Under the pieces are notes generated by a model. It searched no databases, was not told where the DNA came from, and saw nothing but the letters and a program-made list of their open reading frames with translations. This document shows, one piece after another, positions 2,590 to 60,427 of a stretch of 64,000 bases of DNA. Position 1 is the stretch's first letter. Every line of letters starts with the position of its first letter. The stretch is from the IMG/VR virus record IMGVR_UViG_3300023174_000038, positions 186,001 to 250,000 of that record, one strand, 5' to 3'. The translations under genes were made by a program, and so were the position numbers.

Positions 2590-2623
2590 TTTCCCGCAAT
2601 CTTAGGCTAGGAATAAATATTTT

Positions 2624-2938
2624 ATGTATACAATTTTTAAAAAACAAATAAGGGAGTCATTAAACATCCCTTTTTATTTTGAGAAACATCTTACACCAAA
2701 TGAGTATAAGGTATATTTTCACACTAATTTTGTTGTAAATGAAAAATTTATTTCACATGAAGTAACTTATTCAGAAGATAAATTAATTATTATTGACAAA
2801 TTAGTTTGGTCATCACGTGATGCATTTTTAGATTATGCGTCAGATGCATTTTGTTATGACATATTAATGTTTCCGAATAAAATGTATAATATTAAAAATA
2901 AAATTGCAACAGTAATATCAGTAGAGGGGATATCATAA
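2624..2938 (+). CDS. Small hypothetical protein, paralog of 3562-3867
   Basis: Shared pattern (R..NI.PFY; SEDKL/SDDNL; W.S.D); TAAATA 4 nt upstream of ATG. Confidence 0.7.
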   Translation: MYTIFKKQIRESLNIPFYFEKHLTPNEYKVYFHTNFVVNEKFISHEVTYSEDKLIIIDKLVWSSRDAFLDYASDAFCYDILMFPNKMYNIKNKIATVISVEGIS

Positions 2939-3528
2939 TGACAATAGGGTTACCAATTTGGAAGACGTTTGAATCCAACGATTTTTTTAAAGATTTACAG
3001 ATCCCTAAAGATTGGGATACATTAGAAGATTTTGTTAATTGGTATATGGAATCTAAAATTCCTATTATGATTCCATGGAATGCTAAAGTTATACGTAGTG
3101 ATGATGCTGTGGCTATTTCTATTTTCAGAAAAGGCCAGTATCAAGTAGAATTTTATTTAGAATATCCTGAAATGTATATACGTAAACATTCACATCCTAG
3201 AATGGAAGTTATAACTATGGATTTGGGTGGAGGAGGATTAACACCTAGAAATGAAAATAATACGTCAAGGATATGGGGTACTGCTTATATGAAATTATTA
3301 GCAGGCGAGTATCATGGTGGTGACACTAGTAGTTTATTAAGTAATGGTTTTTGCACACTTGCATTTCAAAAATGGGAAGATCCTACTGAAATGACTTCTG
3401 CAGCCATTCAATGGAAAGGTGAAATCCAAGGGCCTATTCAAGCAAAACTTATTAAAGATAATGTTAAAACAGCATTAGTTCAGGATAATTATGCAGATGC
3501 TACTGGAATAGATAAAAACAATCAATAA
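2938..3528 (+). CDS. Cupin-like protein, paralog 1
   Basis: HSHPxME and later HG; shares SDDA..I..FRKG..QVE.YL and WKG...GPI with 5018-5587. Confidence 0.6.
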   Translation: MTIGLPIWKTFESNDFFKDLQIPKDWDTLEDFVNWYMESKIPIMIPWNAKVIRSDDAVAISIFRKGQYQVEFYLEYPEMYIRKHSHPRMEVITMDLGGGGLTPRNENNTSRIWGTAYMKLLAGEYHGGDTSSLLSNGFCTLAFQKWEDPTEMTSAAIQWKGEIQGPIQAKLIKDNVKTALVQDNYADATGIDKNNQ

Positions 3529-3561
3529 TTGGACTAAATATTATAACGGAGAAAAACAATC

Positions 3562-3867
3562 ATGTCATACAAAATAACAAGAACAGTAGTCAGACCTAAC
3601 ATCAGCACACCTTTTTATGAAGACCATGCTGATACCACCATTATAGCTTCTTATATTCAAACTACTTACCAGAATACTAATAAAATGATAGAAAAAACTA
3701 CTACAATTAGTGATGATAATTTAACATCTGTTACCGAAATTACCTGGGATTCATCTGATAGTTGGAATGAATTTCTTACTGATAACTATTTAATGACAAC
3801 ATATTTTATGCCTAGTAAAATTTATGAAGGTACACATGGTATGTTTTCTACATTTGTAGGTGCTTAA
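3562..3867 (+). CDS. Small hypothetical protein, paralog of 2624-2938
   Basis: ORF with GGAG SD and TAAATA upstream. Confidence 0.7.
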   Translation: MSYKITRTVVRPNISTPFYEDHADTTIIASYIQTTYQNTNKMIEKTTTISDDNLTSVTEITWDSSDSWNEFLTDNYLMTTYFMPSKIYEGTHGMFSTFVGA

Positions 3868-3876
3868 ATTTGATGT

Positions 3877-6759: not shown

Positions 6760-7374
6760 TTAGTTCCTTTTCTTATATAAATCTCTTTCATTATTGTAAC
6801 GATTGAATTTACGACCTTTAATCCAACCCTGGTCATAATAGTGAGGATAAAGCGCATATGGAATACATTGACTCTTGCTCAAATCAAAGTTTGAAACCCA
6901 GATAGTATTTCCTTTAGCATTTCCTTTCCTTTCTTTTGTCCAACTAAGGCGTTGTCCATGTGAACTGGCCGCTAGGTATTTTTCACGATAAACGGCATCA
7001 TTTAACATTCTATCTCGGTGCTTTAATCCTGCAATCTTAGCAGCCTTGGTTTGCTGTCCCGGTTGATGTCCTTGATTAGGTAATGTGTTTATATAAGAAA
7101 AGGAACCGTGGCCCCCTTCTACTATATTATAAGTAGTGTCTAAACTAACGAAATCCGCGTTTACGACCTGTTTTTCTCTAAATAACATTGATTCTTTGTC
7201 ATTGAAGTGTTCAATGATTTCTTTGACAAAATTCTCTTTACCATATTTTTTGATTGCACGATGAAGATTCAGACCGGATCCAAAGTACCCATCATTTAAG
7301 TCGGAAGTTTGATGAACACCTATATAGATTTTATTATTTAATGTATTGGTGATTTTGTATAGATAATAGAACAT
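6760..7374 (-). CDS. GIY-YIG homing endonuclease (Seg-like)
   Basis: YLYKITN...KIYIG, YFGSG, AIKKYGKENF, YNIVEGG. Confidence 0.88.
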   Translation of the reverse strand: MFYYLYKITNTLNNKIYIGVHQTSDLNDGYFGSGLNLHRAIKKYGKENFVKEIIEHFNDKESMLFREKQVVNADFVSLDTTYNIVEGGHGSFSYINTLPNQGHQPGQQTKAAKIAGLKHRDRMLNDAVYREKYLAASSHGQRLSWTKERKGNAKGNTIWVSNFDLSKSQCIPYALYPHYYDQGWIKGRKFNRYNNERDLYKKRN

Positions 7375-7428
7375 ATTGTATTTATACGGACAGTAAGATG
7401 AAACTATATTAATATACTAACCCTATCA

Positions 7429-9354: not shown

Positions 9355-9379
9355 TGTATAATACTATTAAATAAAATAC

Positions 9380-9454
9380 TCCCTTATAGCTCAGTGGTAG
9401 AGCAGCGCCCTTGTAAGGCGAAGGTCCCGTGTTCAAGTCATGGTGGGGGAACCA
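9380..9454 (+). tRNA. tRNA-Thr(TGT)
   Basis: CGCC-CT TGT AA-GGCG, CCA. Confidence 0.93.
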
Positions 9455-11456: not shown

Positions 11457-12035
11457 TTATTGAATTAGAAGTTGCCAATCTTCATTGCTATAGTGATAAT
11501 CTTCCAACACTTCTAGCATTCTTGCAAAGACAATTAATCCTCTTTTGTGATTAATTAATTCTATTTGATGTAATTTTATCTTCTTTTCAGCAAAAGTTTT
11601 TAATAAATTCTCACCCTCTTTTTTCAACTTAATTTTTTTTGAAACAATATTCAATTTGGCTATTAGATTGTTACATTCTACGATGGCAACAGAGGTTTGT
11701 TGTTGTAATGCACGTATTTCTATTTTCATTTTTAGTATTAAGTCATCAAATTCTGGGTTAATGTGTGGTAGAAATTGTGTTATCATAACAGACAGTCTAC
11801 CAAAGACTTCAGTATTAAGATTGAAGTCATCATAGTGATCACCTGTTGAATCATAGTGTTCACGTTTAGTTGGATCACTTAACACTTCATATGCTAATTT
11901 CATTCGCTTAAACTTTTCTACATCTCCTCCCTTGTCAGGATGATATAATTGTGCCAAGATTCTGTATTTTTGTTTGATTTCTTCAGACGTACAGGTTTTT
12001 GGTAATTCTAAATCATCGTATAGGGAGGTTGTCAT
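11457..12035 (-). CDS. DnaJ-domain protein
   Basis: LYDDLEL...YHPDKGG...AYEVLSDPTKREHYD. Confidence 0.88.
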   Translation of the reverse strand: MTTSLYDDLELPKTCTSEEIKQKYRILAQLYHPDKGGDVEKFKRMKLAYEVLSDPTKREHYDSTGDHYDDFNLNTEVFGRLSVMITQFLPHINPEFDDLILKMKIEIRALQQQTSVAIVECNNLIAKLNIVSKKIKLKKEGENLLKTFAEKKIKLHQIELINHKRGLIVFARMLEVLEDYHYSNEDWQLLIQ

Positions 12036-12088
12036 AACAATATTTATCATGAAATATTGCATGTAGTATTAAGTACTATGTTTAAAAT

Positions 12089-13534: not shown

Positions 13535-13717
13535 TTAGCGATGGTTTGTTTTGTTTATGATTTGATGTAAGATGTTAGGATCATCACTCATCATCCTAGC
13601 TAGTAAACCAGTAAGATAACCCCGTTCATATAATAATTGTTCGTGGCTATCTTTGTAATTACGTTTGTTTTGACGCAACAACTTTTCAACAACATCAATA
13701 CAGTTTTGTAGTTCCAT
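13535..13717 (-). CDS. Small hypothetical protein (MELQNC...)
   Basis: TAAATA 4 nt upstream of ATG 13717. Confidence 0.6.
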   Translation of the reverse strand: MELQNCIDVVEKLLRQNKRNYKDSHEQLLYERGYLTGLLARMMSDDPNILHQIINKTNHR

Positions 13718-13732
13718 ACTGTATTTATAAAA

Positions 13733-14019: not shown

Positions 14020-14184
14020 TTATAGTGCTTGTATAAAAGCAAGTGCTGTTTCAATATTATTGAAGAATTTCATAGTCAATTTGAAATTGTCAACATCAAA
14101 TACCATAATGTAAAATGTATGTTCAGCACTCATTGATAAGTGTATAACAAGTCCTGTTTTCGTGATAGCGTCATATATGTACAT
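14020..14184 (-). CDS. Small hypothetical protein (MYIYDAITK...)
   Basis: TAAATA 5 nt upstream of ATG 14184; longer ORF overlaps tRNA-Gly. Confidence 0.55.
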   Translation of the reverse strand: MYIYDAITKTGLVIHLSMSAEHTFYIMVFDVDNFKLTMKFFNNIETALAFIQAL

Positions 14185-14196
14185 AAATATATTTAT

Positions 14197-14270: not shown

Positions 14271-14286
14271 TTATTATAAATATCAT

Positions 14287-14817
14287 ATGAAATTACTATT
14301 TGTGCCATTAGATATAAAAGTCACTGATATCAACTTTGATTTAGGTGAAAAACAAAACTATCACATAAATCATTGGGAAACATTTGATGTTATTGGGAAA
14401 GAAAATAATTATCAAAACTATAACAGTTTATTAAATCAACTTCCAATAACGGATATCACTATCTTTACACATAAGATTCAAAAAACTAAAATTGGACCTC
14501 ATTATGATTATCATGGTTTGCATGATGAATTATATAAACATTTCAAAGAAAATGAGCCAGCCGGCTATCATGTAGTTTTAAAAGGTAAAGGTGACTCATT
14601 AGAAATTTTTAACGGCAAAGAATGGATTAACCCTATATTACCTAAAGTGCCTATAGCATACTTACTAAATTTAACTTCTTGCATACATAGAGTAAAAGAA
14701 GATAATTCAAGAGAAACACTGTATATACAAGGTTGGTTAGATATTAAAAAACATAATCAATTAATAGAACGCAGTTTAAAACAATATGGCAATCTAGCAG
14801 TATATAGCCAAGCTTAA
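14287..14817 (+). CDS. Hypothetical protein, possible double-stranded beta-helix oxygenase
   Basis: PHYD...IHRV...R pattern; TATAAATA upstream. Confidence 0.5.
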   Translation: MKLLFVPLDIKVTDINFDLGEKQNYHINHWETFDVIGKENNYQNYNSLLNQLPITDITIFTHKIQKTKIGPHYDYHGLHDELYKHFKENEPAGYHVVLKGKGDSLEIFNGKEWINPILPKVPIAYLLNLTSCIHRVKEDNSRETLYIQGWLDIKKHNQLIERSLKQYGNLAVYSQA

Positions 14818-15093
14818 TTATTTACCAATTCTATTTAAAATGTTCATTGCTCTGGTTCTTAACCGTTCAGTAAATTCTGATTCAGTTAATGCTCCTTTAG
14901 CAAGATTACATTTTCTACAAGTTACTTGAAGATTATTATACGTGGTTTCTCCACCTTTACTTTCAGCAATCACATGATCTATGTGTATTTCTTTATCGGA
15001 TAAGTCTTCATCACAATAGACACACCATTTTCCGTCCCTTTCAATAACTCTACGACGTAGGTTAAGAGGGATGTATTGTTTCTTTTGTAGCAT
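14818..15093 (-). CDS. HNH endonuclease
   Basis: RDGKWCVYC, HIDHVIAESKGG, NLQVTCRKCNLAK. Confidence 0.9.
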   Translation of the reverse strand: MLQKKQYIPLNLRRRVIERDGKWCVYCDEDLSDKEIHIDHVIAESKGGETTYNNLQVTCRKCNLAKGALTESEFTERLRTRAMNILNRIGK

Positions 15094-15158
15094 AAATTTA
15101 TTTAGCTACCCAAATATAGTAGACAGATAAATAGTTTTCTGTTATTATGAATAATAAA

Positions 15159-15327: not shown

Positions 15328-15402
15328 CGCGGGGTAGAGAAGTAGTAACTCATCAGGCTCATAACCTGAAGATCGGCGGTGCGAATCCGTCCCCCGCATC
15401 CA
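15328..15402 (+). tRNA. Initiator tRNA-fMet(CAT)
   Basis: CGCGGGG/CCCCGCA with C1:A72 mismatch; TCAGG-CT CAT AA-CCTGA. Confidence 0.9.
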
Positions 15403-15670: not shown

Positions 15671-15846
15671 GTAAAGGTAGCTTGCCAAGACCTTATAGTG
15701 TTGATTTGAAAACTTTCAACAATAATTGGGATAATATCTTTCGCAAGCCTGATCCAAGAATTATTGAGGATCAAAAGAATGAAGATGAAGCATTTGAACA
15801 AATTGCTAGTCAATCAGAAGTTAAAGATAGTACCCAAGGTGGTTAA
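15667..15846 (+). CDS. Small hypothetical protein (MSKGSLPRP...)
   Basis: 59-aa ORF coupled by ATGA overlap. Confidence 0.55.
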   Translation: MSKGSLPRPYSVDLKTFNNNWDNIFRKPDPRIIEDQKNEDEAFEQIASQSEVKDSTQGG

Positions 15847-15855
15847 ATAGAATGT

Positions 15856-15930
15856 GGATCGTTAACTCAGTGGTAGAGTAGCGCCTTTACACGGCGAATG
15901 TCGGGAGTTCGACCCTCTCACGATCCACCA
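15856..15930 (+). tRNA. tRNA-Val(TAC)
   Basis: CGCC-TT TAC AC-GGCG, CCA. Confidence 0.93.
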
Positions 15931-17585: not shown

Positions 17586-18806
17586 TCATCTGACTATTTG
17601 ATTGTTAGAATAATCTTGTAGATACATACGACCTCTAGGTACTCTATTCTTTACAGCGTATTTTTCTAGGTCTTGCATAGCTTGTTGTTGTGTTTTATTT
17701 ACTGCGGTTGCAACTTGCCTTCCTGCATTATATATTCTCCAATCACTTATACGTGGACCTTCAGGTTCAGTAGGTTGTGTTGCTTGAGTTGGTTCAGGTT
17801 CAGCTGGTTGATTTACAAAAACATTATCATCCGGTGGTATATCCTTGCTCGGTGCACCTGGGGTTGATTTATAACTTTGAGGGAATTTTGCTACTATTTG
17901 TTTGGCAGCTTCTCTAACATCATATCCGTCAGGTGGACTAATTTCTTTACTACCGGCTTTTACTTCACCAGCTTTTGTAAGTATTGCTTTAACAATTTCT
18001 TTCATTAATCCGGGAAATCTTTTAGCAAACTCAGCATCAGCGCCAACTCTATTATATCTTTGATCCTGTGTACTATTTACAAGTTGACTAGTAGGTGCAT
18101 GTAATTGCCACTTTCCATTTTTATTATCAATGTTTTGTTTATCAACAATACTAACGATAGGACCATCAGGAGCATAATTATTAAACCAATTTAATCCACT
18201 AGATCCACCTGTACAGAAGTTACTCATGTGTCCTGTTTGGTTATTAAATGTATAACAAGCACCGTAGTTCAATGGCATGATAACATGAAATCTATCATTA
18301 TCTAGTAATACAATTTCTTTTCTATTACGTTTATGCTTTTCTAATGCTTCAGCATCTTTAATTCTTCGTAGAGTATTACGATACTCATCTTTTCCCATTG
18401 CCTGTTGTAATGCCCGTATACTAGGAAACTTATTAAAGTCTTGATCTGGCTTCTGTAATAAACCACGTGTACTTAATGCTTGCCATGCACCTAATGCATC
18501 TCCGCCCTCACCATTCAAATCTTCATAATCTATAGCATGATTGTTATATAGTTTTAATAACCAATTATCAAACTTACCTTCTTTGCTCAAATCACCATAC
18601 TCATTTTTAGCTAGTGTTTGATTAACTAATTTACTCCAAGATTGAACATAATCAGCGACTGTGGGTCTTGGACCCATATCTGCTATTTCATTTTTAGGGA
18701 ATGTCCTATCATGTCTGACAGCAATAGCTAACATTTTTGCTAGCTTTGGGTCCTTCATTATATTAGTACCTATATTAGCTTCTGTTAAAAAGTGTGTTGC
18801 TCTCAT
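17586..18806 (-). CDS. Hypothetical protein, possible virion internal protein
   Basis: 406-aa ORF; N-terminus MRATHFLTEA. Confidence 0.7.
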   Translation of the reverse strand: MRATHFLTEANIGTNIMKDPKLAKMLAIAVRHDRTFPKNEIADMGPRPTVADYVQSWSKLVNQTLAKNEYGDLSKEGKFDNWLLKLYNNHAIDYEDLNGEGGDALGAWQALSTRGLLQKPDQDFNKFPSIRALQQAMGKDEYRNTLRRIKDAEALEKHKRNRKEIVLLDNDRFHVIMPLNYGACYTFNNQTGHMSNFCTGGSSGLNWFNNYAPDGPIVSIVDKQNIDNKNGKWQLHAPTSQLVNSTQDQRYNRVGADAEFAKRFPGLMKEIVKAILTKAGEVKAGSKEISPPDGYDVREAAKQIVAKFPQSYKSTPGAPSKDIPPDDNVFVNQPAEPEPTQATQPTEPEGPRISDWRIYNAGRQVATAVNKTQQQAMQDLEKYAVKNRVPRGRMYLQDYSNNQIVR

Positions 18807-19708
18807 TATACTAAACTCCTTTTTAGATAAGCAAGAACCGCACTTAATTTCTGTCTATCTCCGTTAGCTATATCTGACAACACTTTTGTAGGACCGTCAT
18901 TCTTTTCTGATGATAAACTACTATCACGATATCTATAACCACTGGTTACATTACCTGTTAATTCTGGATAGTAATATCTTGCCGTTAAAACTATACTATT
19001 GTTTACAGCACTAGTAAGTAATTCAGTCATGGCACCATTATCTAAACCTTCAATTGCCTGATCAATTAATTTTACCTGATCAATTTTCTTATCTACTTTG
19101 TGATGAGCATCATTTTTTGCCATACTAGCAATAACGCCATTAATATCAGCTTTAGAAGCAATTAGTATTTTCTTAAAAAGTGGTTTGAATCGTTTGGTTA
19201 ATTTATTCGTAGTAGTAAAGCCTGCAGGCTCTGGTTTATTGCTAGCACGATCCTGGCGTAATTGTTTAGAGTACTCACTATCCATGAAGTAAAATTTTCT
19301 AGCATCACCTACAATCTTTTTTAACAAACTATTAGCATCGGTAACATTGTCTGCAAAGGTAGAATATACCATATTGCCCTCATCAGGATCAGGTTTACCG
19401 TTACTAGCGAATATTTGATATGAACCAGACCTTGATGCTCTTCTTCCATAGCTATCGGATACCATAAATCTTACTGCGCCGAATCCTTTATTACCTGCTA
19501 TTAATAACCATGTCCCGGGATGATCTTTTAGATCAGTCCATTTGGGTCTGACCGCAGGTTCAGGCTGAATATCATGACCAAAAGCTTCTTTAGAGTGTAA
19601 CTGTTTTAATATTTCTTGTGCACCTGGCCCGGTAAATTGAGCCATAGCTGTACTGGCTTCTGAAACTATGCTTTCGCATAATTGTGAAAAATACTTATAA
19701 TTATCCAT
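18806..19708 (-). CDS. Hypothetical protein, possible virion internal protein
   Basis: 300-aa ORF; N-terminus ...LCESIVSEA; TAAATA upstream. Confidence 0.7.
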   Translation of the reverse strand: MDNYKYFSQLCESIVSEASTAMAQFTGPGAQEILKQLHSKEAFGHDIQPEPAVRPKWTDLKDHPGTWLLIAGNKGFGAVRFMVSDSYGRRASRSGSYQIFASNGKPDPDEGNMVYSTFADNVTDANSLLKKIVGDARKFYFMDSEYSKQLRQDRASNKPEPAGFTTTNKLTKRFKPLFKKILIASKADINGVIASMAKNDAHHKVDKKIDQVKLIDQAIEGLDNGAMTELLTSAVNNSIVLTARYYYPELTGNVTSGYRYRDSSLSSEKNDGPTKVLSDIANGDRQKLSAVLAYLKRSLV

Positions 19709-19729
19709 ATATGTATTTATTCTTTCCGT

Positions 19730-20320
19730 TTATTTACGTCCTATAATCATATATCGTTTATAGCCATTAGTCTCATATTGTATGTTTGTAACACCGGAAT
19801 ATATCAAATTACTTAAATTAAACCGATTAACTAACTCATCTAAACTATCGGTTGTTTGTTTTATAAACCAAGGGAATTCAGGATCTTTCATATTAGTAGT
19901 TTGAATACATACCAATTTTCCTTTTGGAACTGAATCATACCATTTATTACTATCCATTTGGTCTATACTACAGTTAATAAAAATGCTATTAATACAGTTA
20001 CTAAAATCATAGTCATTAACGTCCTGTACATGATTATAAACTCTAGGTAATTCATATTTCCACATATTACATATTTTATTAGCATTAGTTATTGCTTCTG
20101 GATTTATATCATAACCATGAACCTCATAATAGAATGTAGGGTTACGTGTAAGTAGCATAAATGCTAATAGATTATCCCAGCACCCTAGAATATGTAATGA
20201 GGGTATGCTAATACATTCACGATGTATAGCGTTTTCTAGTTCCTCACATAGCCATAGTTTGCTTTTAATCAATCCATGATAAAAGGATTCATGTGTATCA
20301 AATTTAGTTGAATTTGTCAT
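19730..20320 (-). CDS. Methyltransferase-fold protein
   Basis: SKLWL, ILGCW, GYDIN, FINCS, RYMIIG. Confidence 0.6.
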   Translation of the reverse strand: MTNSTKFDTHESFYHGLIKSKLWLCEELENAIHRECISIPSLHILGCWDNLLAFMLLTRNPTFYYEVHGYDINPEAITNANKICNMWKYELPRVYNHVQDVNDYDFSNCINSIFINCSIDQMDSNKWYDSVPKGKLVCIQTTNMKDPEFPWFIKQTTDSLDELVNRFNLSNLIYSGVTNIQYETNGYKRYMIIGRK

Positions 20321-21209: not shown

Positions 21210-21297
21210 GATAATATTTAGTTGCTAAAAAATGTCGCTAAATAATAGCATATTTTAAATTTATGCTAAATACGAATAACACTACTCCGAGGCTAAA

Positions 21298-42806: not shown

Positions 42807-43343
42807 TTAATCCCAAAGTGCTCTAAAATATTTACCAAACAGATCCAAACCTTCTTGGATACGATCTTCATGTAGTTGATGCCCTTCAGCATCATACCAA
42901 TGTGCGTCAGGATCTTTATCAACCATTTGAAATGTATCTTCTACTTTACCTGTTATAGGATTGGGGTATGTTTTATCAGTTTTAATCCAATCATAGTCAC
43001 TTTTGCCATGATGATATTTGTCACCATAATCTTCAAATGCAATTTGGTGAAAAGCCCAAATCATTTTGTCTAGTGTTTCATCCCAACGTTTAGCACCTTC
43101 TTCCCATGCCTCATCGTGTGATTCAATATAGAAATCAAAACTTTGTTGTGTACTATATTCTTCTCCGCCAACATCTACAAAATCACTGGGGATACCCTGT
43201 TTAGTTTGTTTTAGTTGAATTAATGCCGGATAGATAATAGTAGCTAGCGTGTGGTCTGTACTCCAAGTATCAAATCTATCAATTTGTACATTGATTTTTC
43301 TACGATTACCTTTTCTAGGGTAATTGCCAATATTTATTTTCAT
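42807..43343 (-). CDS. Hypothetical protein
   Basis: DTWSTDHTLA...GLDLFGKYFRALWD. Confidence 0.7.
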   Translation of the reverse strand: MKINIGNYPRKGNRRKINVQIDRFDTWSTDHTLATIIYPALIQLKQTKQGIPSDFVDVGGEEYSTQQSFDFYIESHDEAWEEGAKRWDETLDKMIWAFHQIAFEDYGDKYHHGKSDYDWIKTDKTYPNPITGKVEDTFQMVDKDPDAHWYDAEGHQLHEDRIQEGLDLFGKYFRALWD

Positions 43344-43666
43344 ACTTTTTCAGTTACCTTGCCTTCAATAAATGCAACAAAATAATCTCCGTGCTTTACT
43401 GTAGCATATTCAATTTTCTTGTATTCTCTACTTAGTTGTGCTAGTTGCTCCAATGAATTACCTTGACAAATAAAATCGTTTGTTTCACGGTCATATAACA
43501 AAATAATATCATCTACTAATTCTGTTTCTAATTTATAAACATTAGGTTTAGTTACTTCTTCAACAATGATAAATGAACGTAAGTTTTTACGTAGTTTATA
43601 CATTGTGTAGAACTCACCCATAACCCATCCTAGGGCTAGTATAAGAATGATATCAAGTAGTGTCAT
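43340..43666 (-). CDS. Membrane-anchored hypothetical protein
   Basis: N-terminal TM segment. Confidence 0.6.
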   Translation of the reverse strand: MTLLDIILILALGWVMGEFYTMYKLRKNLRSFIIVEEVTKPNVYKLETELVDDIILLYDRETNDFICQGNSLEQLAQLSREYKKIEYATVKHGDYFVAFIEGKVTEKV

Positions 43667-43670
43667 AATA

Positions 43671-43952
43671 TTATTTATTGATAGTTAAGTTAGACCATTT
43701 CTTTAATTTCTTAAACTTATTCTTTTTAGCCTGATCTAAACCTTCAACTGTAATACCCACATTGTTATCTGTAATCAATTCAACCATGGCCAGCAAGTCA
43801 CCCAATTCTTCTTCAAGCATTTGGATATTAGTCATTGGCTTATTAGGTTTCATTTGATCTGGACCGAACCTAAAACACTTGCTAACAGCTTGTGTAACCT
43901 CGGCACATTCCTCTTGTAAGATTAGTAGTATTTCTCTTGTATCTTCGTTCAT
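43671..43952 (-). CDS. MazG-like NTP pyrophosphohydrolase
   Basis: EECAE...EEELGDLL. Confidence 0.8.
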   Translation of the reverse strand: MNEDTREILLILQEECAEVTQAVSKCFRFGPDQMKPNKPMTNIQMLEEELGDLLAMVELITDNNVGITVEGLDQAKKNKFKKLKKWSNLTINK

Positions 43953-51007: not shown

Positions 51008-51499
51008 TTAACATTTATCAAAACGTTGATGTTTAAACCAACGTTTACGACCGTGTCCTAATTTCAATGAAATTCCATGTTTGGCTAACCTTTCACGATG
51101 TGCGTAAAAGCTAGGACCATGACTCATTATTCTGTCCTTACCCTCACGTTCACGTTTTTCCCCGTCAATATCCCATTGATATTGATGAACCATTTCATGT
51201 GCTAGAGTAGTGATTAACCATTGTTTACAGAACCATTTGTCCATAAGACGGATTTTACAATAGGTTTTACGATATTTGACTATTTCATAACTAGCAAAGC
51301 ACATGCCCCAGTATTTTCTACAGCGGGCCGTAACCTCAATTTCAGGCATGTTCAACTTATTGTTAAAGCATGCCTGATTGATTATTTTATATAGTTCTAT
51401 TACTTCAGCTACATTTGTTCGGTAGCTTAGACGTTTTTGGTAACCGATACTTGGTAGCGGTTCACGCATTAGTTTGGAAAGTTCGGATTTTTTTGTCAT
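51008..51499 (-). CDS. SprT-like metalloprotease
   Basis: TLAHEMVH...SHGPSF. Confidence 0.85.
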   Translation of the reverse strand: MTKKSELSKLMREPLPSIGYQKRLSYRTNVAEVIELYKIINQACFNNKLNMPEIEVTARCRKYWGMCFASYEIVKYRKTYCKIRLMDKWFCKQWLITTLAHEMVHQYQWDIDGEKREREGKDRIMSHGPSFYAHRERLAKHGISLKLGHGRKRWFKHQRFDKC

Positions 51500-51597
51500 A
51501 CTGTATTTATTGTAGCAGGAACCTGTAATCTAACAATATATTAGGAAAAATAACCAATTTGTCGTCCGTGAGTAAATATATGTTTAGGAGAAATTAA

Positions 51598-53517: not shown

Positions 53518-55413
53518 TTAAATTGATTCTTTAACTTCTGCATCAACTACATTGTCATCAGACTTTTGTGATTGAGATGCCTCTTTAGCTTTTTGTTCCT
53601 CTTCGGATTTAACCTTAGTAATAGGACCAATAGCTTCATATAGTTCTTTAACCTTGTTGTCAATGGCTTCAACATCGGTTCCGGCTAATGCAACTTCTAG
53701 TGCATCAATAGCATTAGATGCTTTTTCTTTTTCTTCGGCTGACACTTTGTCACCGTATTTTTCATAATCTTTACGGAAACTATTTAATGTTGATTCACCA
53801 CTATTTTTTGTTTGAATGAACTTAACTTGTTTAGCATCAGATTCAGCATTCGCTTCAGCTTCATCAACCATCTGTTGAATTTCTCTTTCAGATAATCCTG
53901 AATCAGATTTGATTGTAATCTTATTCTCTTTACCAGTACCTTTGTCTCTAGCACTTACATTAAGAATACCATTAGCATCAATATCTAATGTAACTTCAAT
54001 TTGCGGGACACCTCGCATTGCAGGAGGAATACCCTCTAAATTAAATTCACCCAATGACTTGTTATATGTAAACAAATCACGTTCACCTTGTGCAACTTTA
54101 ATAGTTACGGCTGGCTGATTGTCATCTGCTGTACTGAATACTTGACTATGTTTAGTTGGAATAGTTGTATTCTTTTTAATTAATTTAGTGAATACACCAC
54201 CTGAGGTTTCAATACCTAAGCTTAATGGTGTTACATCTAGTAACAATACGTCGGTACGTTCACCGGCTAATACACTACCTTGAAGTGCCGCACCTGCTGC
54301 CACTGCTTCATCTGGGTTAACATCTTTACGTGGTTGTTTACCAAATAACGCTTCAACCGTTTCCTGTACCTTAGGCATACGTGTCATACCACCAACAAGA
54401 ATAACCTCATCAATATCAGATGTAGATACACCTGCATCTTTCATGGCTTGCTTGCATGGCTGAATACTACGTTGGATTAATTCATCTACCAATGATTCTA
54501 ATTTGGCACGACTTAATTTAACATTTAAATGTTTAGGACCACTAGCATCTGCTGTAATATAAGGTAAGTTAACATCTGTTTGTGCTGAACTTGACAATTC
54601 AATTTTAGCCTTTTCAGCCGCTTCTTTTAAGCGTTGTAGTGCTAGCATATCTTTCTTAAGGTCAACCGCATTGTCTTTCTTAAATTCATCAACCAAGTAA
54701 TCCATGATACGTTGGTCAAAGTCTTCACCACCTAAGAATGTATCACCATTAGTTGATAATACTTCAATTTGAGTTTCACCTTCAACGTCTGCTAATTCAA
54801 TGATAGATACATCAAATGTACCACCACCTAAGTCATAGACAGCAATCTTACGATCCTTCTTGTCTTGTTTGTCTACGCCATATGCTAACGCAGCCGCTGT
54901 GGGTTCGTTGATAATACGCAATACTTCTAAACCAGCAATGCGTCCTGCATCTTTAGTAGCTTGTCTTTGACTGTCATTGAAGTAAGCTGGTACTGTAATA
55001 ACTGCTTGAGTAACTGTTGTACCCAAATAGTCTTCCGCAGTCTTTTTCATTTTGCGTAGTACTTCAGCACTGATTTGTGGTGGGGCTAATTTTTGTCCGT
55101 TTACTTCTACCCATGCATCACTATTCTCGTTTTTAACGATTTTATATGGCATTAAATCAATATCTTTTTGAACAGCGTTTTCTGTGAACTTACGTCCAAT
55201 TAATCGCTTGGCAGCATAGATAGTGTTTTTTGGGTTTGTAACTGATTGACGTTTGGCACTTGCACCTACTAGAATCTCATCATTGGCATAGGCAACGATT
55301 GAGGGTGTAGTTCTTGTACCTTCACTATTTTCAATTATTTTGGGAATTCCGTTTTCAATAACGGCTACACAGGAATTTGTGGTTCCGAGATCTATTCCAA
55401 TTACTTTGCTCAT
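53518..55413 (-). CDS. dnaK: DnaK / Hsp70
   Basis: [25 protein letters not shown]; start MSKV after AGGAG. Confidence 0.98.
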
Positions 55414-55482
55414 TGTTTTCTCCTTTGTAAAGCAAGATTTTTTCTCTATAGACCCGTTAGGCATCTATAGAAAAGTATTTAT
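55414..55482 (-). promoter_or_regulatory. TAAATA promoter and ROSE-like thermometer of dnaK
   Basis: CUAUAGAUGCC..GGGUCUAUAG hairpin then UCUUGCUU-UACA-AAGGAGA. Confidence 0.65.
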
Positions 55483-55521: not shown

Positions 55522-55740
55522 TTAATACAACTTTTTAGGCAATTGCTGGTCACGCAAATATTTGTCCCAACGTCTTTTAGCCTGACTTTTAGCTAGTTTA
55601 CGTTTAACTGTAGGTTTCACAAATTCTTGTCGGTCACGGGTTTCTTGTAAAGTACCATAATCTGTAATCATTTTCTTGAACTTACGTAAGGCCTTTTCTG
55701 TATTTCCGTCATTAACTAAAACTTTGCGTCCTCTAATCAT
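55522..55740 (-). CDS. rpsU: Ribosomal protein S21
   Basis: EKALRKFKK...RQEFVKPTVKRK. Confidence 0.88.
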   Translation of the reverse strand: MIRGRKVLVNDGNTEKALRKFKKMITDYGTLQETRDRQEFVKPTVKRKLAKSQAKRRWDKYLRDQQLPKKLY

Positions 55741-56942
55741 ATTGCGGCTTTTGGCTGTAAAATTTGCTCCTGATTAATATTTATCTTTTTAATGTTGTTT
55801 TCACGGTACTTCTTAGTGTTATACATATGAGGCATTAAAACCTTCTCAATCTCTGTATGTAAACCACGAGCACCGGTCTTTAATTTCATTGTATTTTCAG
55901 CTAACTGAGAAATAGCATCTTCTGTAAAATTTAACTCAATATCATCTAAACTTAATAGATACTTATATTGGTCGATATAGTTGTTTTTAACTTTTGTCAG
56001 GACCTGAACCATTTCGTCTTTTGTAAGATTTTCAACATTTACTGTAGTAGTAAAACGTCCGATGAATTCAGGAATCATACCAAATCGTGTTAAATCATCC
56101 GGGCTAACCATAGATAAATCACCCTCTTTGCGGGAGTCCTTAATATCAGCACCAAATCCAATACTAGTTCCATTGATACGATTGTTAACAATATCCTTTA
56201 ATCCAACAAATGCACCACCGGCAATGAATAGAATGTTCTTTGTATTAACCTCAATCATATCACCACTAGGATGCTTACGTCCTCCACCAGCTGGGATACG
56301 ACATGTTGTACCCTCAACCATCTTTAATAGTGCTTGTTGTACACCTTCGCCGGATACGTCACGGGTAATACTTGCACCTTCGCTTTTACGGGCAATTTTG
56401 TCAATCTCATCAACAAACACAATACCACGTTCTGCCAGTTTAGCATCACCACCGGCAGCATTAACTAGCATACTAATCATTGATTCAACATCATCACCTA
56501 CATATCCAGCCTCGGTCAAGCTAGTAGCATCAGCAACAATAAAGGGCACTTCTAAGTATTTTGCTACAGTTTTAGCTAATAGTGTTTTACCTGAACCTGT
56601 TGGTCCAATTAATAATACGTTACCTTTTTGTATTTCTAAGTCTTTTGGCGGATTATTAATACGTTTATAGTGATTAGCAATAGCTACACTAAGAACCATT
56701 TTAGCATTAATTTGACCAATAATATGTTGGTCTAAAAATTCTTTAATAGTTTCCGGATCATATCTTATATGGTCTTTGTTTATTGAATCTTCGGAATTGT
56801 TATTTTCATCAACCATTAATTGAGTACATAACTCAATACAGTCGCTACAGATAGCAACATCTTCTCCGACAATTAATTTATTTACGACATCTTTATGATT
56901 GCCGCAAAATGAGCAATGGCTTAATTTTGTTTCTGTTGACAT
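55737..56942 (-). CDS. clpX: ClpX ATPase
   Basis: CSFCG..ICSDC Zn finger, GPTGSGKT, DEIDK, RKH, IGF. Confidence 0.97.
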   Translation of the reverse strand: MSTETKLSHCSFCGNHKDVVNKLIVGEDVAICSDCIELCTQLMVDENNNSEDSINKDHIRYDPETIKEFLDQHIIGQINAKMVLSVAIANHYKRINNPPKDLEIQKGNVLLIGPTGSGKTLLAKTVAKYLEVPFIVADATSLTEAGYVGDDVESMISMLVNAAGGDAKLAERGIVFVDEIDKIARKSEGASITRDVSGEGVQQALLKMVEGTTCRIPAGGGRKHPSGDMIEVNTKNILFIAGGAFVGLKDIVNNRINGTSIGFGADIKDSRKEGDLSMVSPDDLTRFGMIPEFIGRFTTTVNVENLTKDEMVQVLTKVKNNYIDQYKYLLSLDDIELNFTEDAISQLAENTMKLKTGARGLHTEIEKVLMPHMYNTKKYRENNIKKININQEQILQPKAAI

Positions 56943-56955
56943 ACTAATACTTATC

Positions 56956-57969: not shown

Positions 57970-58601
57970 TTACCGAATTTTTTACGCAATTGATTAGAAA
58001 CTTGTTCGGATTCTTTATCCCAACGAATTGTTACAGCAACTTCTTGTGGACCAACTATCTCTTGTTTGATAACCTTAAATCCACGCAAGATACCTTGAGC
58101 ATTAACACGAATGGTCTCGTTTAATTGATAAGCAGTATCATTGCTGTTTTCACGCACAGAATGATTTGTATCTTTTTCTGCATCTGTATCACTCATTGCA
58201 ACAACTTCTCCTGTTGTTGTGCGTGACTTCATTCGGTCGCTTGCTTTCTCAACGTTCTTGGCAAGTGTGTTAGTTACACGTGTGCTAGAAACATCTTCCT
58301 GAATAAAGTGACGTACATTTGCACGGGCACGATCACCTGCACGAATTAATGCAGTACGGCGATTGTTATCAGTGTTGCCATTTGAACTTGCAGTACCGAC
58401 TGATTCAATACTAGTGATTGCACAATTTGATTTGTCCCATGAATACCAAGCGCAATCAGTTTCAATACGAATTGTATCTTGTTTAAATGATGTGGAAAGC
58501 TTTTGATTACGGATCTGCTCAAATTCGCCTTCACCGCGTTTCATACTAGAACAGCCCACTAATGAGAGAGCAGTTACTAAAGCCAATAATTTGAAATTCA
58601 T
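57966..58601 (-). CDS. LPP20-like lipoprotein
   Basis: Lipobox LVGC; GGAG SD before ATG 58601. Confidence 0.7.
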   Translation of the reverse strand: MNFKLLALVTALSLVGCSSMKRGEGEFEQIRNQKLSTSFKQDTIRIETDCAWYSWDKSNCAITSIESVGTASSNGNTDNNRRTALIRAGDRARANVRHFIQEDVSSTRVTNTLAKNVEKASDRMKSRTTTGEVVAMSDTDAEKDTNHSVRENSNDTAYQLNETIRVNAQGILRGFKVIKQEIVGPQEVAVTIRWDKESEQVSNQLRKKFGN

Positions 58602-58659
58602 TTCAATCTCCGATAAGTTAAGATATGTGTATATTAACACAATAGCCAATTATTGTCAA

Positions 58660-60207
58660 TTATTTTTGATTCTTTAGGAACAATTCTATCTGTTCTTTTT
58701 CATTTTCGGACAACAAATCAAGGTCATATTCGCCCTTTTCTATCTTTTCAACCAAATATTTGATGTATTTTTGGTTATGTAGATAGGTATCCGACTGTTC
58801 CTTTTGAACCTCAATCCATTTGCGACTGTCATACTTATAAACACGGTTTGGTAATGCATCTACACGTACAAATACATCACCTTTATTAGCAACATTTGGG
58901 AATTTTATACCAAAATTTGTATTAATTGTACGTTGACTATCAGCGGTTAACATAAAGATATCTGGACGCAAACTCTTTAATGCTTCCATTTGATAATGCT
59001 TATCTTCAAACATTACATAACCACCATCTAATTCCTTATAAGGTTTTTCGGGTTCAATTGTTACTTCAGTATCTTTTACTTCAAATACCGATTCTTCTAC
59101 TACTTCTTCTTTTGTAGCAACCATTGGCTTAGTATCAAAACTTACAAATGGTTTACTTAAGTAAGGATGTTTTTCTAATAAAGATTTTGGTTCTTCTGGT
59201 TCTTCAAAGGGTCCGTCCTTTACATCACAATTTTTATTTGGACAGAATAAACCTATACCGGGTGCATTAACCAACTCAGTATCGCACATATAACAGTTAA
59301 TAGGATGTTTGGGAGTTCCAGCCATTGCAACAATTTGTTTAATTTGTTCATCGGTTAATGGACCGTCATCAGGTTCATATGCTGGTTCTGTGACAGTGGG
59401 AGTTGATATTGGTTCAGTCCCTAGAGGGCTGTCACCCTCCTCATCCCATTCTTTACTTGCATTAGCGGCAAGAACAAGCGCAATAGCTAATGGATCAAAT
59501 ACAATAACAAGTAAAATAATAACCCAACGTACCGCACTCTCTAACATATTGTTATCAGCATTATCACCATAAATCAATGCGGCAATATATTTGATAGGAC
59601 CAACTTCTGCTTCTACTTTGCGATTCTCTGCCGCAATAGGTGCTCGTTCTTCATTAAGTTTAGCAATTTCTTTCTGTGCATCACCAATATCTTTTTGCAG
59701 TTTACTACGTTCACCGGCTTGTTGTCTACGAATTTGTACCGCACGTTCAGCACTATTCTCGCTATCACCACGACTTAATCGTTGGTCAACTTGATTATCC
59801 ATTTGAGTTAATGCTTTACGTGCTAACTCAATATTGTCTCGTTGTGTTTTAATCTTTTCATCATACAAAGATAATTTGTCTTGACTATCACCAGTACTGA
59901 TGCCATGCTCCATGTGAGCTTTACTTAAGAAGCCAAATATACCCATACTTGTTAGTAATGCTAATGCAATAACGGCAGGTACAAGATAGAGTTTGAGTAA
60001 GAAACCTGCACGACCCCAGTACTTACGTAGCCAAACGGTTGTGGTGATCTTTCCTATTTCAAGGATACCTCCCATAATGATAACGGGAATAACCGCACCT
60101 GCAAAGATAGCGGTTAAGCCGATAATACTATACCAGGCAGCTACCGAACTAAGTGATAGTGCTACTAATAGTGTAAGATTTGAGAATGATAAAAATTTAA
60201 GGCGCAT
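58660..60207 (-). CDS. Membrane / coiled-coil protein
   Basis: TM segments, TSMGIFGFLSKAH, GPIKYIA, VFDPLA. Confidence 0.75.
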   Translation of the reverse strand: MRLKFLSFSNLTLLVALSLSSVAAWYSIIGLTAIFAGAVIPVIIMGGILEIGKITTTVWLRKYWGRAGFLLKLYLVPAVIALALLTSMGIFGFLSKAHMEHGISTGDSQDKLSLYDEKIKTQRDNIELARKALTQMDNQVDQRLSRGDSENSAERAVQIRRQQAGERSKLQKDIGDAQKEIAKLNEERAPIAAENRKVEAEVGPIKYIAALIYGDNADNNMLESAVRWVIILLVIVFDPLAIALVLAANASKEWDEEGDSPLGTEPISTPTVTEPAYEPDDGPLTDEQIKQIVAMAGTPKHPINCYMCDTELVNAPGIGLFCPNKNCDVKDGPFEEPEEPKSLLEKHPYLSKPFVSFDTKPMVATKEEVVEESVFEVKDTEVTIEPEKPYKELDGGYVMFEDKHYQMEALKSLRPDIFMLTADSQRTINTNFGIKFPNVANKGDVFVRVDALPNRVYKYDSRKWIEVQKEQSDTYLHNQKYIKYLVEKIEKGEYDLDLLSENEKEQIELFLKNQK

Positions 60208-60214
60208 CTAATAT

Positions 60215-60427
60215 TTAGTCTAGTGTTACGTCAAATAAGTGACTATAATAACTAAGAAATTCAGCTACAGGTAAAACAAGTTTTTGAGGGATATTGGGAC
60301 CTCTGGACACATGATATGTAACTAAATAATCACCGCGGTTCTCATCGGTCTTTTTTACCTGTATTACTTCAATCTTGTTACCATCTTCAAACACATAGGA
60401 TTGTCCTATCAAGGTATATGCGTTCAT
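60215..60427 (-). CDS. Hypothetical protein
   Basis: ORF. Confidence 0.55.
   Translation of the reverse strand: MNAYTLIGQSYVFEDGNKIEVIQVKKTDENRGDYLVTYHVSRGPNIPQKLVLPVAEFLSYYSHLFDVTLD

What the first reader, a model, noticed from the sequence alone, without database searches (positions are those of the whole stretch)
2614..60218. Systematically leaderless late genes: TAAATA-N4/5-ATG
Seen: TAAATA lies 4-5 nt before the ATG with no intervening SD at starts 2624, 7374, 12035, 13717, 14184, 14287, 19708, 21209, 35988, 51499 and 60207; a TAAGTA variant does so at 38053 and 56942. Established: T4 late transcription starts a few nt after TATAAATA. Inference: many late mRNAs begin at or beside the AUG, and phage IF-1, S21 and tRNA-fMet may tune initiation between these and SD-led early mRNAs.
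Basis: partly seen in the sequence, partly recalled or inferred. Interest (0 to 1): 0.6.

Follow-up and report, generated by a model that had tools for sequence, protein, structure and literature searches.

The report
Late promoter boxes abutting start codons
In this 349-kb freshwater giant phage, about 35 genes (15 in the window) have the phage's T4-like late-promoter box (A)TAAATA only 4-5 bases before an ATG with no ribosome-binding site, so they are very probably made as leaderless late mRNAs; related cultured phages and T4 use the same kind of box but not this arrangement.

Summary
All 13 listed sites check out, and two more lie in the window (ATG 15093-, 43666-).

**Counts in the 348,701-bp genome**
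- TAAATA-N4/5-ATG occurs 50 times against about 19 expected.
- 31 sites sit at the first ATG of an ORF against 0.5 expected.
- Box-to-ATG spacing is bimodal: N4/5 with no SD (35 genes), almost nothing at N8-11, then N14-29 with an SD in between (about 55 genes, including portal, baseplate and virion proteins).
- Both classes share the extended box (g)ATAAATA(c/t).

**Why the box is read as a promoter**
- The genome encodes a gp55-family late sigma factor.
- T4 geometry (box at -13 to -6) puts the A of an N5 ATG at +1.
- The same box lies 6-7 nt before three tRNA 5' ends.
- The box and its spacing are kept upstream of orthologues in hundreds of related IMG/VR contigs while the flanks diverge.
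- T4, PA5oct, CBB and RaK2 have no N4/5 class.

**Qualifications**
- The leaderless genes are mostly homing endonucleases and accessory genes (SOD, DnaJ-domain, SprT-like, ClpX), not "the late genes" in general.
- No RNA data could be obtained, so the transcription start sites are inferred.
- S21, IF-1 and an initiator-like tRNA are present, but a role in leaderless translation is untested.
- S21 also occurs in PA5oct, which lacks the leaderless class.

The parts
2614..2938 (+). Box TAAATA 2614-2619, N4, ATG 2624; 104-aa ORF of unknown function
6760..7384 (-). Box 7384-7379, N4, ATG 7374; 204-aa GIY-YIG (SegE-like) homing endonuclease beside the tRNA cluster
11457..12046 (-). Box 12046-12041, N5, ATG 12035; 192-aa DnaJ-domain protein
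   Evidence: orthologues keep the box at N5/N6
13535..13727 (-). Box 13727-13722, N4, ATG 13717; 60-aa ORF inside the tRNA region
   Evidence: kept at N4 in relatives
14020..14195 (-). Box 14195-14190, N5, ATG 14184; 54-aa ORF. Part of the palindrome TAAATATATTTA, whose + strand copy (14184-14189) lies 7 nt before tRNA-Gly (14197)
14277..14817 (+). Box 14277-14282, N4, ATG 14287; 176-aa ORF directly after tRNA-Gly
   Evidence: 3 of 3 relatives keep N4
14818..15104 (-).
   Evidence: 4 of 4 relatives keep N5
18806..19719 (-). Box 19719-19714, N5, ATG 19708; 300-aa ORF of unknown function
   Evidence: gAATAAATAcatatATG is invariant in relatives while the 15 nt upstream vary
20304..21220 (-). Box 21220-21215, N5, ATG 21209; 301-aa ORF of unknown function
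   Evidence: 6 of 6 unique upstream sequences keep N5
35434..35999 (-). Box 35999-35994, N5, ATG 35988; 184-aa Fe/Mn superoxide dismutase-like protein
   Evidence: In relatives 36 of 60 unique upstream sequences keep the box at N4-7; others are coupled to the upstream gene or SD-led. The PA5oct orthologue has the box 23 nt upstream plus an SD
37868..38064 (-). Variant box TAAGTA 38064-38059, N5, ATG 38053; 61-aa ORF
   Evidence: weakly conserved (6 of 23)
43340..43677 (-).
51008..51509 (-). Box 51509-51504, N4, ATG 51499; 163-aa SprT-like protein
   Evidence: (29 of 30 unique upstream sequences keep the box at N4-8)
55737..56953 (-). Variant box gATAAGTA 56953-56948, N5, ATG 56942; ClpX (401 aa)
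   Evidence: orthologues keep gATAAGTA or gATAAATT at N5
58660..60217 (-). Box 60217-60212, N4, ATG 60207; 515-aa ORF (weak match to a virion structural protein)
   Evidence: 51 of 52 unique upstream sequences keep the box at N4-7, among orthologues 53-89% identical over the whole protein, with unrelated flanks
55522..55783 (-). Ribosomal protein S21 gene (ATG 55740) with the same box 37 nt upstream; box and spacing conserved in relatives
53518..55481 (-). DnaK/Hsp70 (ATG 55464) with box ATAAATA ending 11 nt upstream and no SD, implying a leader of only a few nt; spacing conserved in relatives
36795..37007 (-). Translation initiation factor IF-1 gene; lies inside an operon and has no box of its own
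15328..15402 (+). Initiator-like tRNA-Met: C1xA72 mismatch, acceptor stem as I recall it for E. coli tRNA-fMet, and 2 of the 3 G:C pairs in the anticodon stem
9368..9454 (+). Box 9368-9373 ending 6 nt before the 5' end of tRNA-Thr (9380)
15844..15930 (+). Box 15844-15849 ending 6 nt before the 5' end of tRNA-Val (15856); conserved in relatives
36021..36824 (+). Example of the SD-led class in the window: box, 27 nt containing AAGGAG, then ATG 36054 (256 aa). Other examples have ATGs at 3562+, 6055-, 11084+, 21298+, 21770+, 30286-, 35061- and 51598+

Best explanation
(A)TAAATA is this phage's late promoter. It is a -10-type box with no -35 element, read by host RNA polymerase carrying the phage's gp55-family late sigma factor, and transcription probably starts at an A 5-6 nt after the box.

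The phage uses the box in two layouts:
- About 55 genes, including portal, baseplate and other virion genes, have a leader of roughly 9-24 nt carrying an SD.
- About 35 genes (15 in the window, counting the TAAGTA variants) have the ATG itself at the start point. The late transcript then begins with AUG, or 0-2 nt before it, and must be translated by the leaderless route.

These ATGs have no SD, so read-through transcripts from upstream should leave them largely untranslated. Expression would then be tied strictly to late-promoter firing. That logic suits the homing endonucleases and accessory genes (SOD-like, DnaJ-domain, SprT-like, ClpX) that dominate this class. It parallels the late-promoter gating of T4 intron endonucleases, but without an RNA hairpin.

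Shown: the motif, its spacing statistics, its conservation, the sigma homologue and the gene classes. Inferred: the transcription start position, leaderless translation and the gating logic.
For: Statistics and spacing:
- 50 sites against about 19 expected, and 31 against 0.5 at the first ATG of ORFs.
- Bimodal spacing: N4 = 15 and N5 = 16, almost nothing at N8-11, then a hump at N14-29 containing an SD.
- Both classes share A at -1 and C/T just after the box, with no conserved upstream positions.

Promoter identity:
- A gp55-family sigma lies at genome 86530-87381 (phrog_12791 E = 3e-71, phrog_234 E = 6e-22, T4 gp55 E = 2e-5).
- The SD-led class includes baseplate wedge, portal and virion proteins.
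- ATAAATA was already predicted as the late promoter of the related phages CBB and GAP32 (PMC5259590).
- 35% of boxes lie in the 7% of the genome that is non-coding, and TAAATA is depleted overall (466 against about 650 simulated).
- Some boxes follow terminator-like hairpins by 10-11 nt.

Start-site geometry:
- The T4 box spans -13 to -6.
- An A lies at offset 5 or 6 in 44 of 47 SD-led cases (p = 1e-9).
- The base before the ATG is a pyrimidine in 30 of 35 leaderless cases against 166 of 347 others (p = 1e-5).
- After the box at N4/5, ORFs of at least 50 codons open with ATG 37 times, GTG 0 times and TTG 2 times.
- Boxes lie 6-7 nt before three tRNA 5' ends (0.07 expected) and are conserved there in relatives.

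Conservation and comparison:
- The box and spacing are conserved upstream of orthologues while the flanks diverge.
- Orthologues in PA5oct, CBB and RaK2 have the box 21-33 nt upstream with an SD.
- T4, PA5oct, CBB and RaK2 have no N4/5 class.
- Homing endonucleases are enriched: 6 of 10 against 29 of 378 other genes (p = 6e-5).
Against:
- At N4, strict T4 geometry would put +1 on the T of the ATG, so start-site flexibility of +/-1 has to be assumed.
- No gp45-type sliding clamp was found, so the late machinery is not fully T4-like.
- The likely host is a betaproteobacterium (DnaK is closest to Comamonadaceae). In such hosts leaderless mRNAs are expected to be translated poorly.
- Gene starts came from a simple greedy ORF caller, not a trained gene finder.
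Confidence: 0.7

Rival explanations
1. The box at N4/5 acts on RNA, not DNA. It would be an A/U-rich, S1-type ribosome landing site or enhancer that replaces the SD on polycistronic transcripts, so these mRNAs would not be leaderless.
For: The box is A/U-rich and sits where an SD would. 23 of 35 class-A genes have a same-strand upstream neighbour that could supply read-through transcripts. No RNA data exist to exclude this reading.
Against: The same extended box occurs 14-29 nt upstream of SD-led virion genes and 6-7 nt before tRNA 5' ends, where translation is irrelevant. There is a sharp gap at N8-11. The pyrimidine at -1 fits a transcription start site. Twelve of 35 genes have an opposite-strand neighbour, and some follow terminators. 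A gp55 homologue is present.
Confidence: 0.12
2. The pattern is inherited baggage. Mobile homing-endonuclease cassettes would carry a box-plus-ATG 5' end and spread it, so the excess would reflect paralogy rather than a general expression mode.
For: 6 of 10 homing-endonuclease-like genes are of this class.
Against: 29 other class-A genes are unrelated to one another, among them SOD-like, DnaJ-domain, SprT-like, acetyltransferase and virion proteins. Their flanks and N-termini are not alike. Orthologues in cultured relatives have the SD-led layout.
Confidence: 0.08
3. The start codons are mis-assigned. Transcripts would start near the box, but translation would begin at a downstream SD-led codon, and the ATG next to the box would be incidental.
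For: Starts were assigned by a simple rule. A few class-A ATGs are the 2nd or 3rd candidate start in their frame.
Against: ATG at exactly N4/5 is 3-fold over background, and 37 of 50 such ATGs open ORFs of at least 50 codons. Protein-level conservation begins at that ATG in orthologues, while the upstream DNA is unrelated. PHROG profiles align from near residue 1.
Confidence: 0.05
4. The pattern is chance or compositional bias in an AT-rich genome.
For: The genome is 36% GC, so A/T hexamers are common.
Against: 61-fold excess at ORF starts. TAAATA is depleted overall. Markov simulations never reached the observed count. No such peak appears in T4, PA5oct, RaK2 or CBB, which have 32-36% GC where measured.
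Confidence: 0.01

Closest known systems
T4 late promoters (TATAAATA, gp55 / gp33 / gp45)
   Same: A -10-type A/T box with no -35 element. A gp55-family sigma is encoded. The box precedes virion genes. T4 geometry (box at -13 to -6) predicts a start 5-6 nt downstream. In T4, a late promoter placed immediately upstream gates the translation of intron endonucleases (PMC2988020, PMC2988022).
   Different: In T4 the box lies 13-29 nt before the ATG and never at N4/5. The sigma here is 284 aa with an N-terminal extension and has only a weak direct match to T4 gp55. No gp45-type clamp was found. The core box is (A)TAAATA rather than TATAAATA.
ATAAATA putative late promoter of RaK2-like jumbo phages (CBB, GAP32; also PA5oct, RaK2, Atu_ph07)
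   Same: Same sigma family (36-40% identity, phrog_12791) and the same box, predicted upstream of structural genes (PMC5259590).
   Different: PA5oct, CBB and RaK2 show no N4/5 class. Their boxes lie about 22-36 nt before the ATG, and orthologues of this phage's leaderless genes there carry SD leaders. IF-1 is absent from them.
Leaderless middle and late transcripts of Thermus phages phiYS40 and Lalka27a
   Same: A large share of phage transcripts begin at the A/G of the start codon, and phiYS40 is reported to shift the IF2/IF3 balance towards leaderless translation (PMC3594737 and bioRxiv 10.64898/2026.04.20.719267).
   Different: Different hosts (Thermus, where leaderless genes are common in the host itself), different promoters and unrelated phages. 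Here only about 10% of genes are of this type, and they coexist with strong SD use.
-10 motif adjacent to ORFs in Deinococcus-Thermus
   Same: A -10 box a few bp upstream of the start codon serves as a minimal promoter that yields leaderless mRNA, and expression depends on the distance (PMC12340547).
   Different: That case involves the host sigma-A and cellular genes. This one involves a phage-encoded late sigma, in a phage whose DnaK is closest to betaproteobacterial ones.
Freshwater bS21-encoding phages (Chen et al. 2022)
   Same: Large freshwater phages that encode S21, reported to be expressed with late genes (PMC9723584). The S21 gene here has a late box.
   Different: Those phages have S21 inside the capsid/terminase block and predicted Bacteroidetes hosts. 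Here S21 lies between ClpX and DnaK, the phage uses SDs heavily, and its DnaK points to Burkholderiales. That paper does not analyse promoters or leaderless genes.

Membership tests
T4-type (gp55-dependent) late promoter | Conserved A/T-rich -10-type box related to TATAAATA, with no conserved -35 element | tested here: met
   Logos of 35 + 55 sites show the invariant core TAAATA (the search pattern), A at -1 in 56-77% of sites, C/T just after the box, and no conserved positions further upstream
T4-type (gp55-dependent) late promoter | Phage encodes a gp55-family sigma factor | tested here: met
   Genome 86530-87381(+): phrog_12791 E = 3e-71; phrog_234 (T4 gp55 family) E = 6e-22; T4 gp55 itself E = 2e-5
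T4-type (gp55-dependent) late promoter | gp45 sliding clamp as mobile enhancer | tested here: not met
   phrog_223 gave no match in the genome at E <= 1; CBB is likewise reported to lack gp33 and gp45
T4-type (gp55-dependent) late promoter | gp33 co-activator | not tested
   No search for gp33 was run
T4-type (gp55-dependent) late promoter | Box precedes virion (late) genes | tested here: met
   Baseplate wedge, portal, virion structural proteins, tail lysin and a tail-fibre-like protein carry the box plus an SD leader
T4-type (gp55-dependent) late promoter | Transcription starts about 6 nt after the box | not testable with these tools
Indirect support: A at offset 5 or 6 in 44 of 47 cases, pyrimidine at -1, and tRNA 5' ends at N6-7
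Leaderless mRNA | Transcript 5' end at, or within about 2 nt of, the start codon | not testable with these tools
   No reads were available; inferred from promoter geometry only
Leaderless mRNA | No Shine-Dalgarno sequence before the start codon | tested here: met
   Positions -10 to -5 are occupied by TAAATA, and the 4-5 nt spacers are mostly A/T/C
Leaderless mRNA | AUG rather than GUG or UUG as start codon | tested here: met
   After the box at N4/5, ORFs of at least 50 codons open with ATG 37 times, GTG 0 times and TTG 2 times. The phage rarely uses GTG or TTG anyway (11 of 145 SD-led starts), so this test is weak
RaK2 / PA5oct-like jumbo myoviruses | Shared core genes and late sigma of the group | tested here: inconclusive
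   Sigma 36-40% identical. Baseplate wedge phrog_10646 E = 4e-261 and portal phrog_213. Only 5 of 35 class-A proteins have tblastn hits in PA5oct, CBB or RaK2. No whole-proteome comparison was done

The most novel reading that the evidence does not exclude
An abundant freshwater clade of giant phages has evolved a two-track late expression programme. Virion genes keep SD leaders. About 10% of genes (homing endonucleases, chaperone and proteostasis genes, other accessory genes, and even some tRNAs) are fused directly to a gp55-type late promoter, so their RNAs start at the functional 5' end. Translation of these genes would therefore be possible only from late-initiated, 5'-AUG transcripts. It would be supported by the phage's own initiation toolkit (IF-1, an initiator-like tRNA, S21) in a proteobacterial host that otherwise translates leaderless mRNA poorly.
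Probability: 0.15. Interest if true: 0.8.

Novelty: new variant of a known kind. Interest (0 to 1): 0.55.

Why it matters
If transcription start mapping confirms it, this would be the first gp55-type late promoter system found to make leaderless mRNAs on a large scale. It would also be a case outside Thermus phages where a phage splits its late genes into SD-led and leaderless sets.

It offers a simple way to tie translation to promoter choice: a gene with no SD is silent on read-through RNA and active only when the RNA starts at its AUG. That is a compact solution for homing endonucleases and accessory genes inserted in either orientation.

It also gives a concrete, testable reason to look at phage-encoded IF-1 and initiator tRNA, whose roles in huge phages remain unknown.

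Practically, gene callers that rely on SD models will mis-start such genes, and the box-to-ATG rule can correct start annotation across this clade. The sigma-factor search matched about 450 stretches in IMG/VR.

Tried and rejected
- **DNA similarity.** A near-identity DNA search of 'phages' found nothing. tblastn with the 1130-aa protein gave one weak tail-fibre hit.
- **Bacteroidetes host.** I considered this host and the 'S21 frees the anti-SD' idea. It is unlikely because SD hexamers are 20-27-fold enriched upstream of starts and DnaK is closest to Comamonadaceae/Burkholderiales.
- **Stop-start coupling.** I tested whether the TAA of the box is the upstream gene's stop codon. Only about 1 of 23 same-strand gaps fits, so this was rejected.
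- **S21 as a correlate.** S21 is also present in PA5oct and Atu_ph07, and PA5oct has no N4/5 class, so this was rejected.
- **A miscount corrected.** I first counted window 12035(-) as endonuclease-like. Pfam shows it is a DnaJ-domain protein, and the enrichment was recomputed.
- **Literature.** The PA5oct and RaK2 papers describe no late box and no leaderless genes. The phiYS40 primary paper (PMC1885378) is not held, so it is cited through secondary sources.

Full report
**What the window is.** The 64-kb window is positions 186001-250000 of a single 348,701-bp IMG/VR virus record with 36% GC, rated 100% complete by CheckV. It encodes 25 tRNAs, all on the + strand at 7.5-17 kb. It also encodes ClpX, DnaK/Hsp70, an ATP-dependent DNA ligase and a P450-like protein, ribosomal protein S21 and IF-1. 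No near DNA match exists among deposited phages. The phage DnaK is most similar (70-72% identity) to DnaK of freshwater Burkholderiales/Comamonadaceae such as Limnohabitans, Rhodoferax and Rubrivivax. SD hexamers (AAGGAG, AAAGGA) are 20-27-fold enriched before starts. The host is therefore probably an SD-using betaproteobacterium; this is an inference.

**The observation.** All 13 listed sites are as described. Eleven lie on the minus strand. The window holds 17 TAAATA-N4/5-ATG sites, of which 13 open ORFs of 54-515 aa.

Genome-wide figures:
- There are 466 TAAATA boxes. An ATG follows at spacing 4 in 22 cases and at spacing 5 in 28, against about 9.3 per spacing. Markov-2 simulations gave 26.7 +/- 3.9, with a maximum of 34.
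- 31 boxes lie 4-5 nt before the first ATG of a called ORF, against 0.5 expected. TAAATA is the commonest hexamer at that position.
- TAAGTA is a tolerated variant, at 5 sites against 0.7 expected.
- TAAATA is depleted in the genome overall (466 against about 650 simulated). 35% of copies lie in the 7% of sequence that is non-coding.

**What the box is.** The distance from the box to the first ATG is bimodal. N4 accounts for 15 genes and N5 for 16. Almost nothing falls at N8-11. A broad hump then runs from N14 to N29 (mode 19-22), and in that class an SD such as AAGGA sits between the box and the ATG.

Both classes share the same extended motif, (g)ATAAATA(c/t), and have no conserved upstream positions. 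The SD-led class contains the baseplate wedge, portal, virion structural proteins, a tail lysin and a tail-fibre-like protein.

The genome encodes a gp55-family late sigma at 86530-87381. It matches phrog_12791 'sigma factor for late transcription' at E = 3e-71, the T4 gp55 family phrog_234 at E = 6e-22, and T4 gp55 itself at E = 2e-5. Its closest homologues (36-40% identity) are in the jumbo phages PA5oct, Phosso, RaK2, CBB and Atu_ph07. For CBB and GAP32, an ATAAATA motif upstream of structural genes has already been proposed as the late promoter (PMC5259590). I therefore take the box to be the late promoter. A gp45-type clamp was not found, as is also reported for CBB.

**Why the N4/5 class is probably leaderless.** The T4 late box occupies -13 to -6 (PMC2988020). 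TAAATA-N5-ATG therefore puts the A of the ATG at +1, and N4 needs a one-base shift.

Four internal observations fit a transcription start at offset 5-6:
- In the SD-led class, 44 of 47 sites have an A at offset 5 or 6 after the box (binomial p = 1e-9). Those are the positions the A of the ATG occupies in the N4/5 class.
- The base before the ATG is a pyrimidine in 30 of 35 N4/5 genes against 166 of 347 others (p = 1e-5). This matches the usual Y(-1)R(+1) start-site context.
- After the box at N4/5, long ORFs open with ATG 37 times, GTG 0 times and TTG 2 times.
- The same box ends 6-7 nt before the mature 5' ends of tRNA-Thr (9380), tRNA-Gly (14197) and tRNA-Val (15856), against 0.07 expected. 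This is conserved in relatives. Translation is irrelevant at a tRNA, so this argues that the box is a DNA signal with a start a few bases downstream.

The empty N8-11 zone is what one expects if a leader must be either absent or long enough to hold an SD. Two further observations support the promoter reading. Some boxes follow terminator-like hairpins by only 10-11 nt, for example at genome 292835 and 345312. One divergent gene pair (genome 181825- and 181847+) has its two ATGs 21 nt apart around the palindrome TATTTATAAATA.

**Comparative evidence.** T4, PA5oct, CBB and RaK2 were fetched whole and analysed in the same way, and none has an N4/5 class. Their boxes lie 13-36 nt before the ATG. 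Orthologues of this phage's leaderless genes in those phages have the box 21-33 nt upstream with an SD.

IMG/VR, by contrast, holds a large freshwater clade. The sigma-factor search matched about 450 stretches, and the best 80 loci are 87-98% identical in that protein. In loci fetched around three window genes, the box and its spacing are kept while the flanking DNA is unrelated:
- 60207: 51 of 52 unique upstream sequences keep the box at N4-7, among orthologues that are 53-89% identical over the whole protein.
- 51499: 29 of 30.
- 19708: 7 of 7.
- 21209: 6 of 6.
- 15093: 4 of 4.
- ClpX orthologues keep gATAAGTA or gATAAATT at N5.

Pooled over 4.2 Mb of these loci, which are not independent of one another, the counts are N4 = 174, N5 = 153, N6 = 61 and N7 = 40. 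For the SOD-like gene (35988), some lineages instead have a coupled or SD-led start, so the layout is evolutionarily labile.

**Which genes are leaderless.** They are not the structural genes. PHROGs and Pfam identify the following:
- GIY-YIG and HNH homing endonucleases. Six of 10 endonuclease-like genes are of this class against 29 of 378 others (p = 6e-5).
- A DnaJ-domain protein (12035).
- An Fe/Mn-SOD-like protein (35988).
- An SprT-like protein (51499).
- ClpX (56942, variant box).
- Outside the window: an acetyltransferase-like protein, a metallophosphoesterase-like protein, a sigma-like regulator and one virion protein family.
- Many ORFs of unknown function.

DnaK has the box at N11 with no SD, implying a leader of only a few nt, and that spacing is conserved.

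In T4, intron endonucleases are translated only from transcripts that start at a late promoter placed immediately upstream, because longer transcripts sequester the RBS (PMC2988022). The layout here would give the same late-only gating more simply. An SD-less internal AUG is silent on read-through RNA and becomes usable only as a 5'-terminal AUG. This step is inference.

**The translation-factor idea.** S21, IF-1 and an initiator-like tRNA are all present. The tRNA at 15328-15402 has a C1xA72 mismatch, an acceptor stem that matches E. coli tRNA-fMet as I recall that sequence, and 2 of the 3 G:C pairs in the anticodon stem. S21 itself has a conserved late box 37 nt upstream, which fits the reported late expression of phage S21 (PMC9723584). 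However, S21 also occurs in PA5oct and Atu_ph07, and PA5oct has no N4/5 class. IF-1 is absent from PA5oct, CBB, RaK2, Atu_ph07 and T4, and it is present in 25 of 39 full-length related loci. That is one lineage-level co-occurrence and not evidence of function. From established knowledge of E. coli, S21 promotes SD-dependent initiation, and IF-1 together with IF-3 tends to disfavour the 70S route. The direction of any effect is therefore unclear.

**Known relatives of the idea.** Leaderless phage transcripts are documented for the Thermus phages phiYS40 and Lalka27a. A '-10 box adjacent to the ORF' is a common expression mode in Deinococcus-Thermus (PMC12340547). I found no paper in the held library that links gp55-type promoters, jumbo or huge phages and leaderless mRNAs.

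**Limits.**
- No RNA data could be obtained.
- Gene starts come from a greedy ORF caller.
- The counts from relatives are not phylogenetically independent.
- gp33 was not searched for.

**Verdict.** The promoter reading is well supported. Leaderless transcripts are likely (about 0.7) but unproven. The link to S21, IF-1 and tRNA-fMet is speculative. I class this as a new variant of known kinds.

Noticed in passing
window 9368-9380, 14184-14197, 15844-15856 (also 16855-16862): The late box ends 6-7 nt before the 5' ends of tRNA-Thr, tRNA-Gly and tRNA-Val, each at the head of a tRNA run, and is conserved there in relatives. Primary tRNA transcripts would have leaders of only 0-2 nt, which would leave little or nothing for RNase P to remove. 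tRNA-Trp has a box 1 nt upstream, which may reflect an ARAGORN boundary error.
   Followed up: partly
genome 181811-181849 (about 4.2 kb upstream of the window start): A divergent gene pair has ATGs only 21 nt apart (181825- and 181847+), each with its own box, forming the palindrome TATTTATAAATA. There is no room for any leader on either side.
   Followed up: partly
window 53518-56953: ClpX, S21 and DnaK form a minus-strand block, and a DnaJ-domain protein lies at 11457-12035. All are preceded by late-type boxes: N5 variant for ClpX, N37 for S21, N11 for DnaK and N5 for DnaJ. This looks like a phage-encoded late chaperone and proteostasis set.
   Followed up: partly
window 35434-35988 and 3877-5016: The phage encodes an Fe/Mn superoxide dismutase-like protein (Pfam Sod_Fe_C, E = 2e-20) and a cytochrome P450-like protein (E = 8.5e-15). 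Both are unusual auxiliary genes for a phage.
   Followed up: no
whole genome: TAAATA is under-represented (466 copies against about 650 in Markov-2 simulations), yet 35% of copies lie in the 7% of the genome that is non-coding. This is consistent with selection against stray late promoters.
   Followed up: partly
window 55741-55783 and the orthologous loci in L183-L262: The S21 leader is conserved (box, then ..caggagcaaatttt.., with the ATG 37 nt after the box). Its GGAG lies about 25 nt before the ATG, which is too far for a normal SD. This may be a regulatory leader.
   Followed up: no
L202 and L227 (IMGVR_UViG_3300027749_002876, 524,565 bp): One 524-kb IMG/VR contig carries two diverged copies (70% and 65% identical to the query) of the 515-aa protein, about 415 kb apart. 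It may be a much larger relative or a chimeric or concatenated assembly.
   Followed up: no
genome 86530-87381 (outside the window): The gp55-family sigma has an N-terminal extension of about 100 aa relative to T4 gp55, shared with PA5oct, RaK2 and CBB. No gp45-type clamp was detected. How this group activates late transcription is open.
   Followed up: partly
genome 25808, 232986, 234599 (window 46986, 48599): A different recurring upstream element, TTAAATAAAGGAC, contains an overlapping SD and is preceded by sigma-70-like TTGACA/TATAAT promoters. It accounts for the small N12-13 group and is probably not a late promoter.
   Followed up: no
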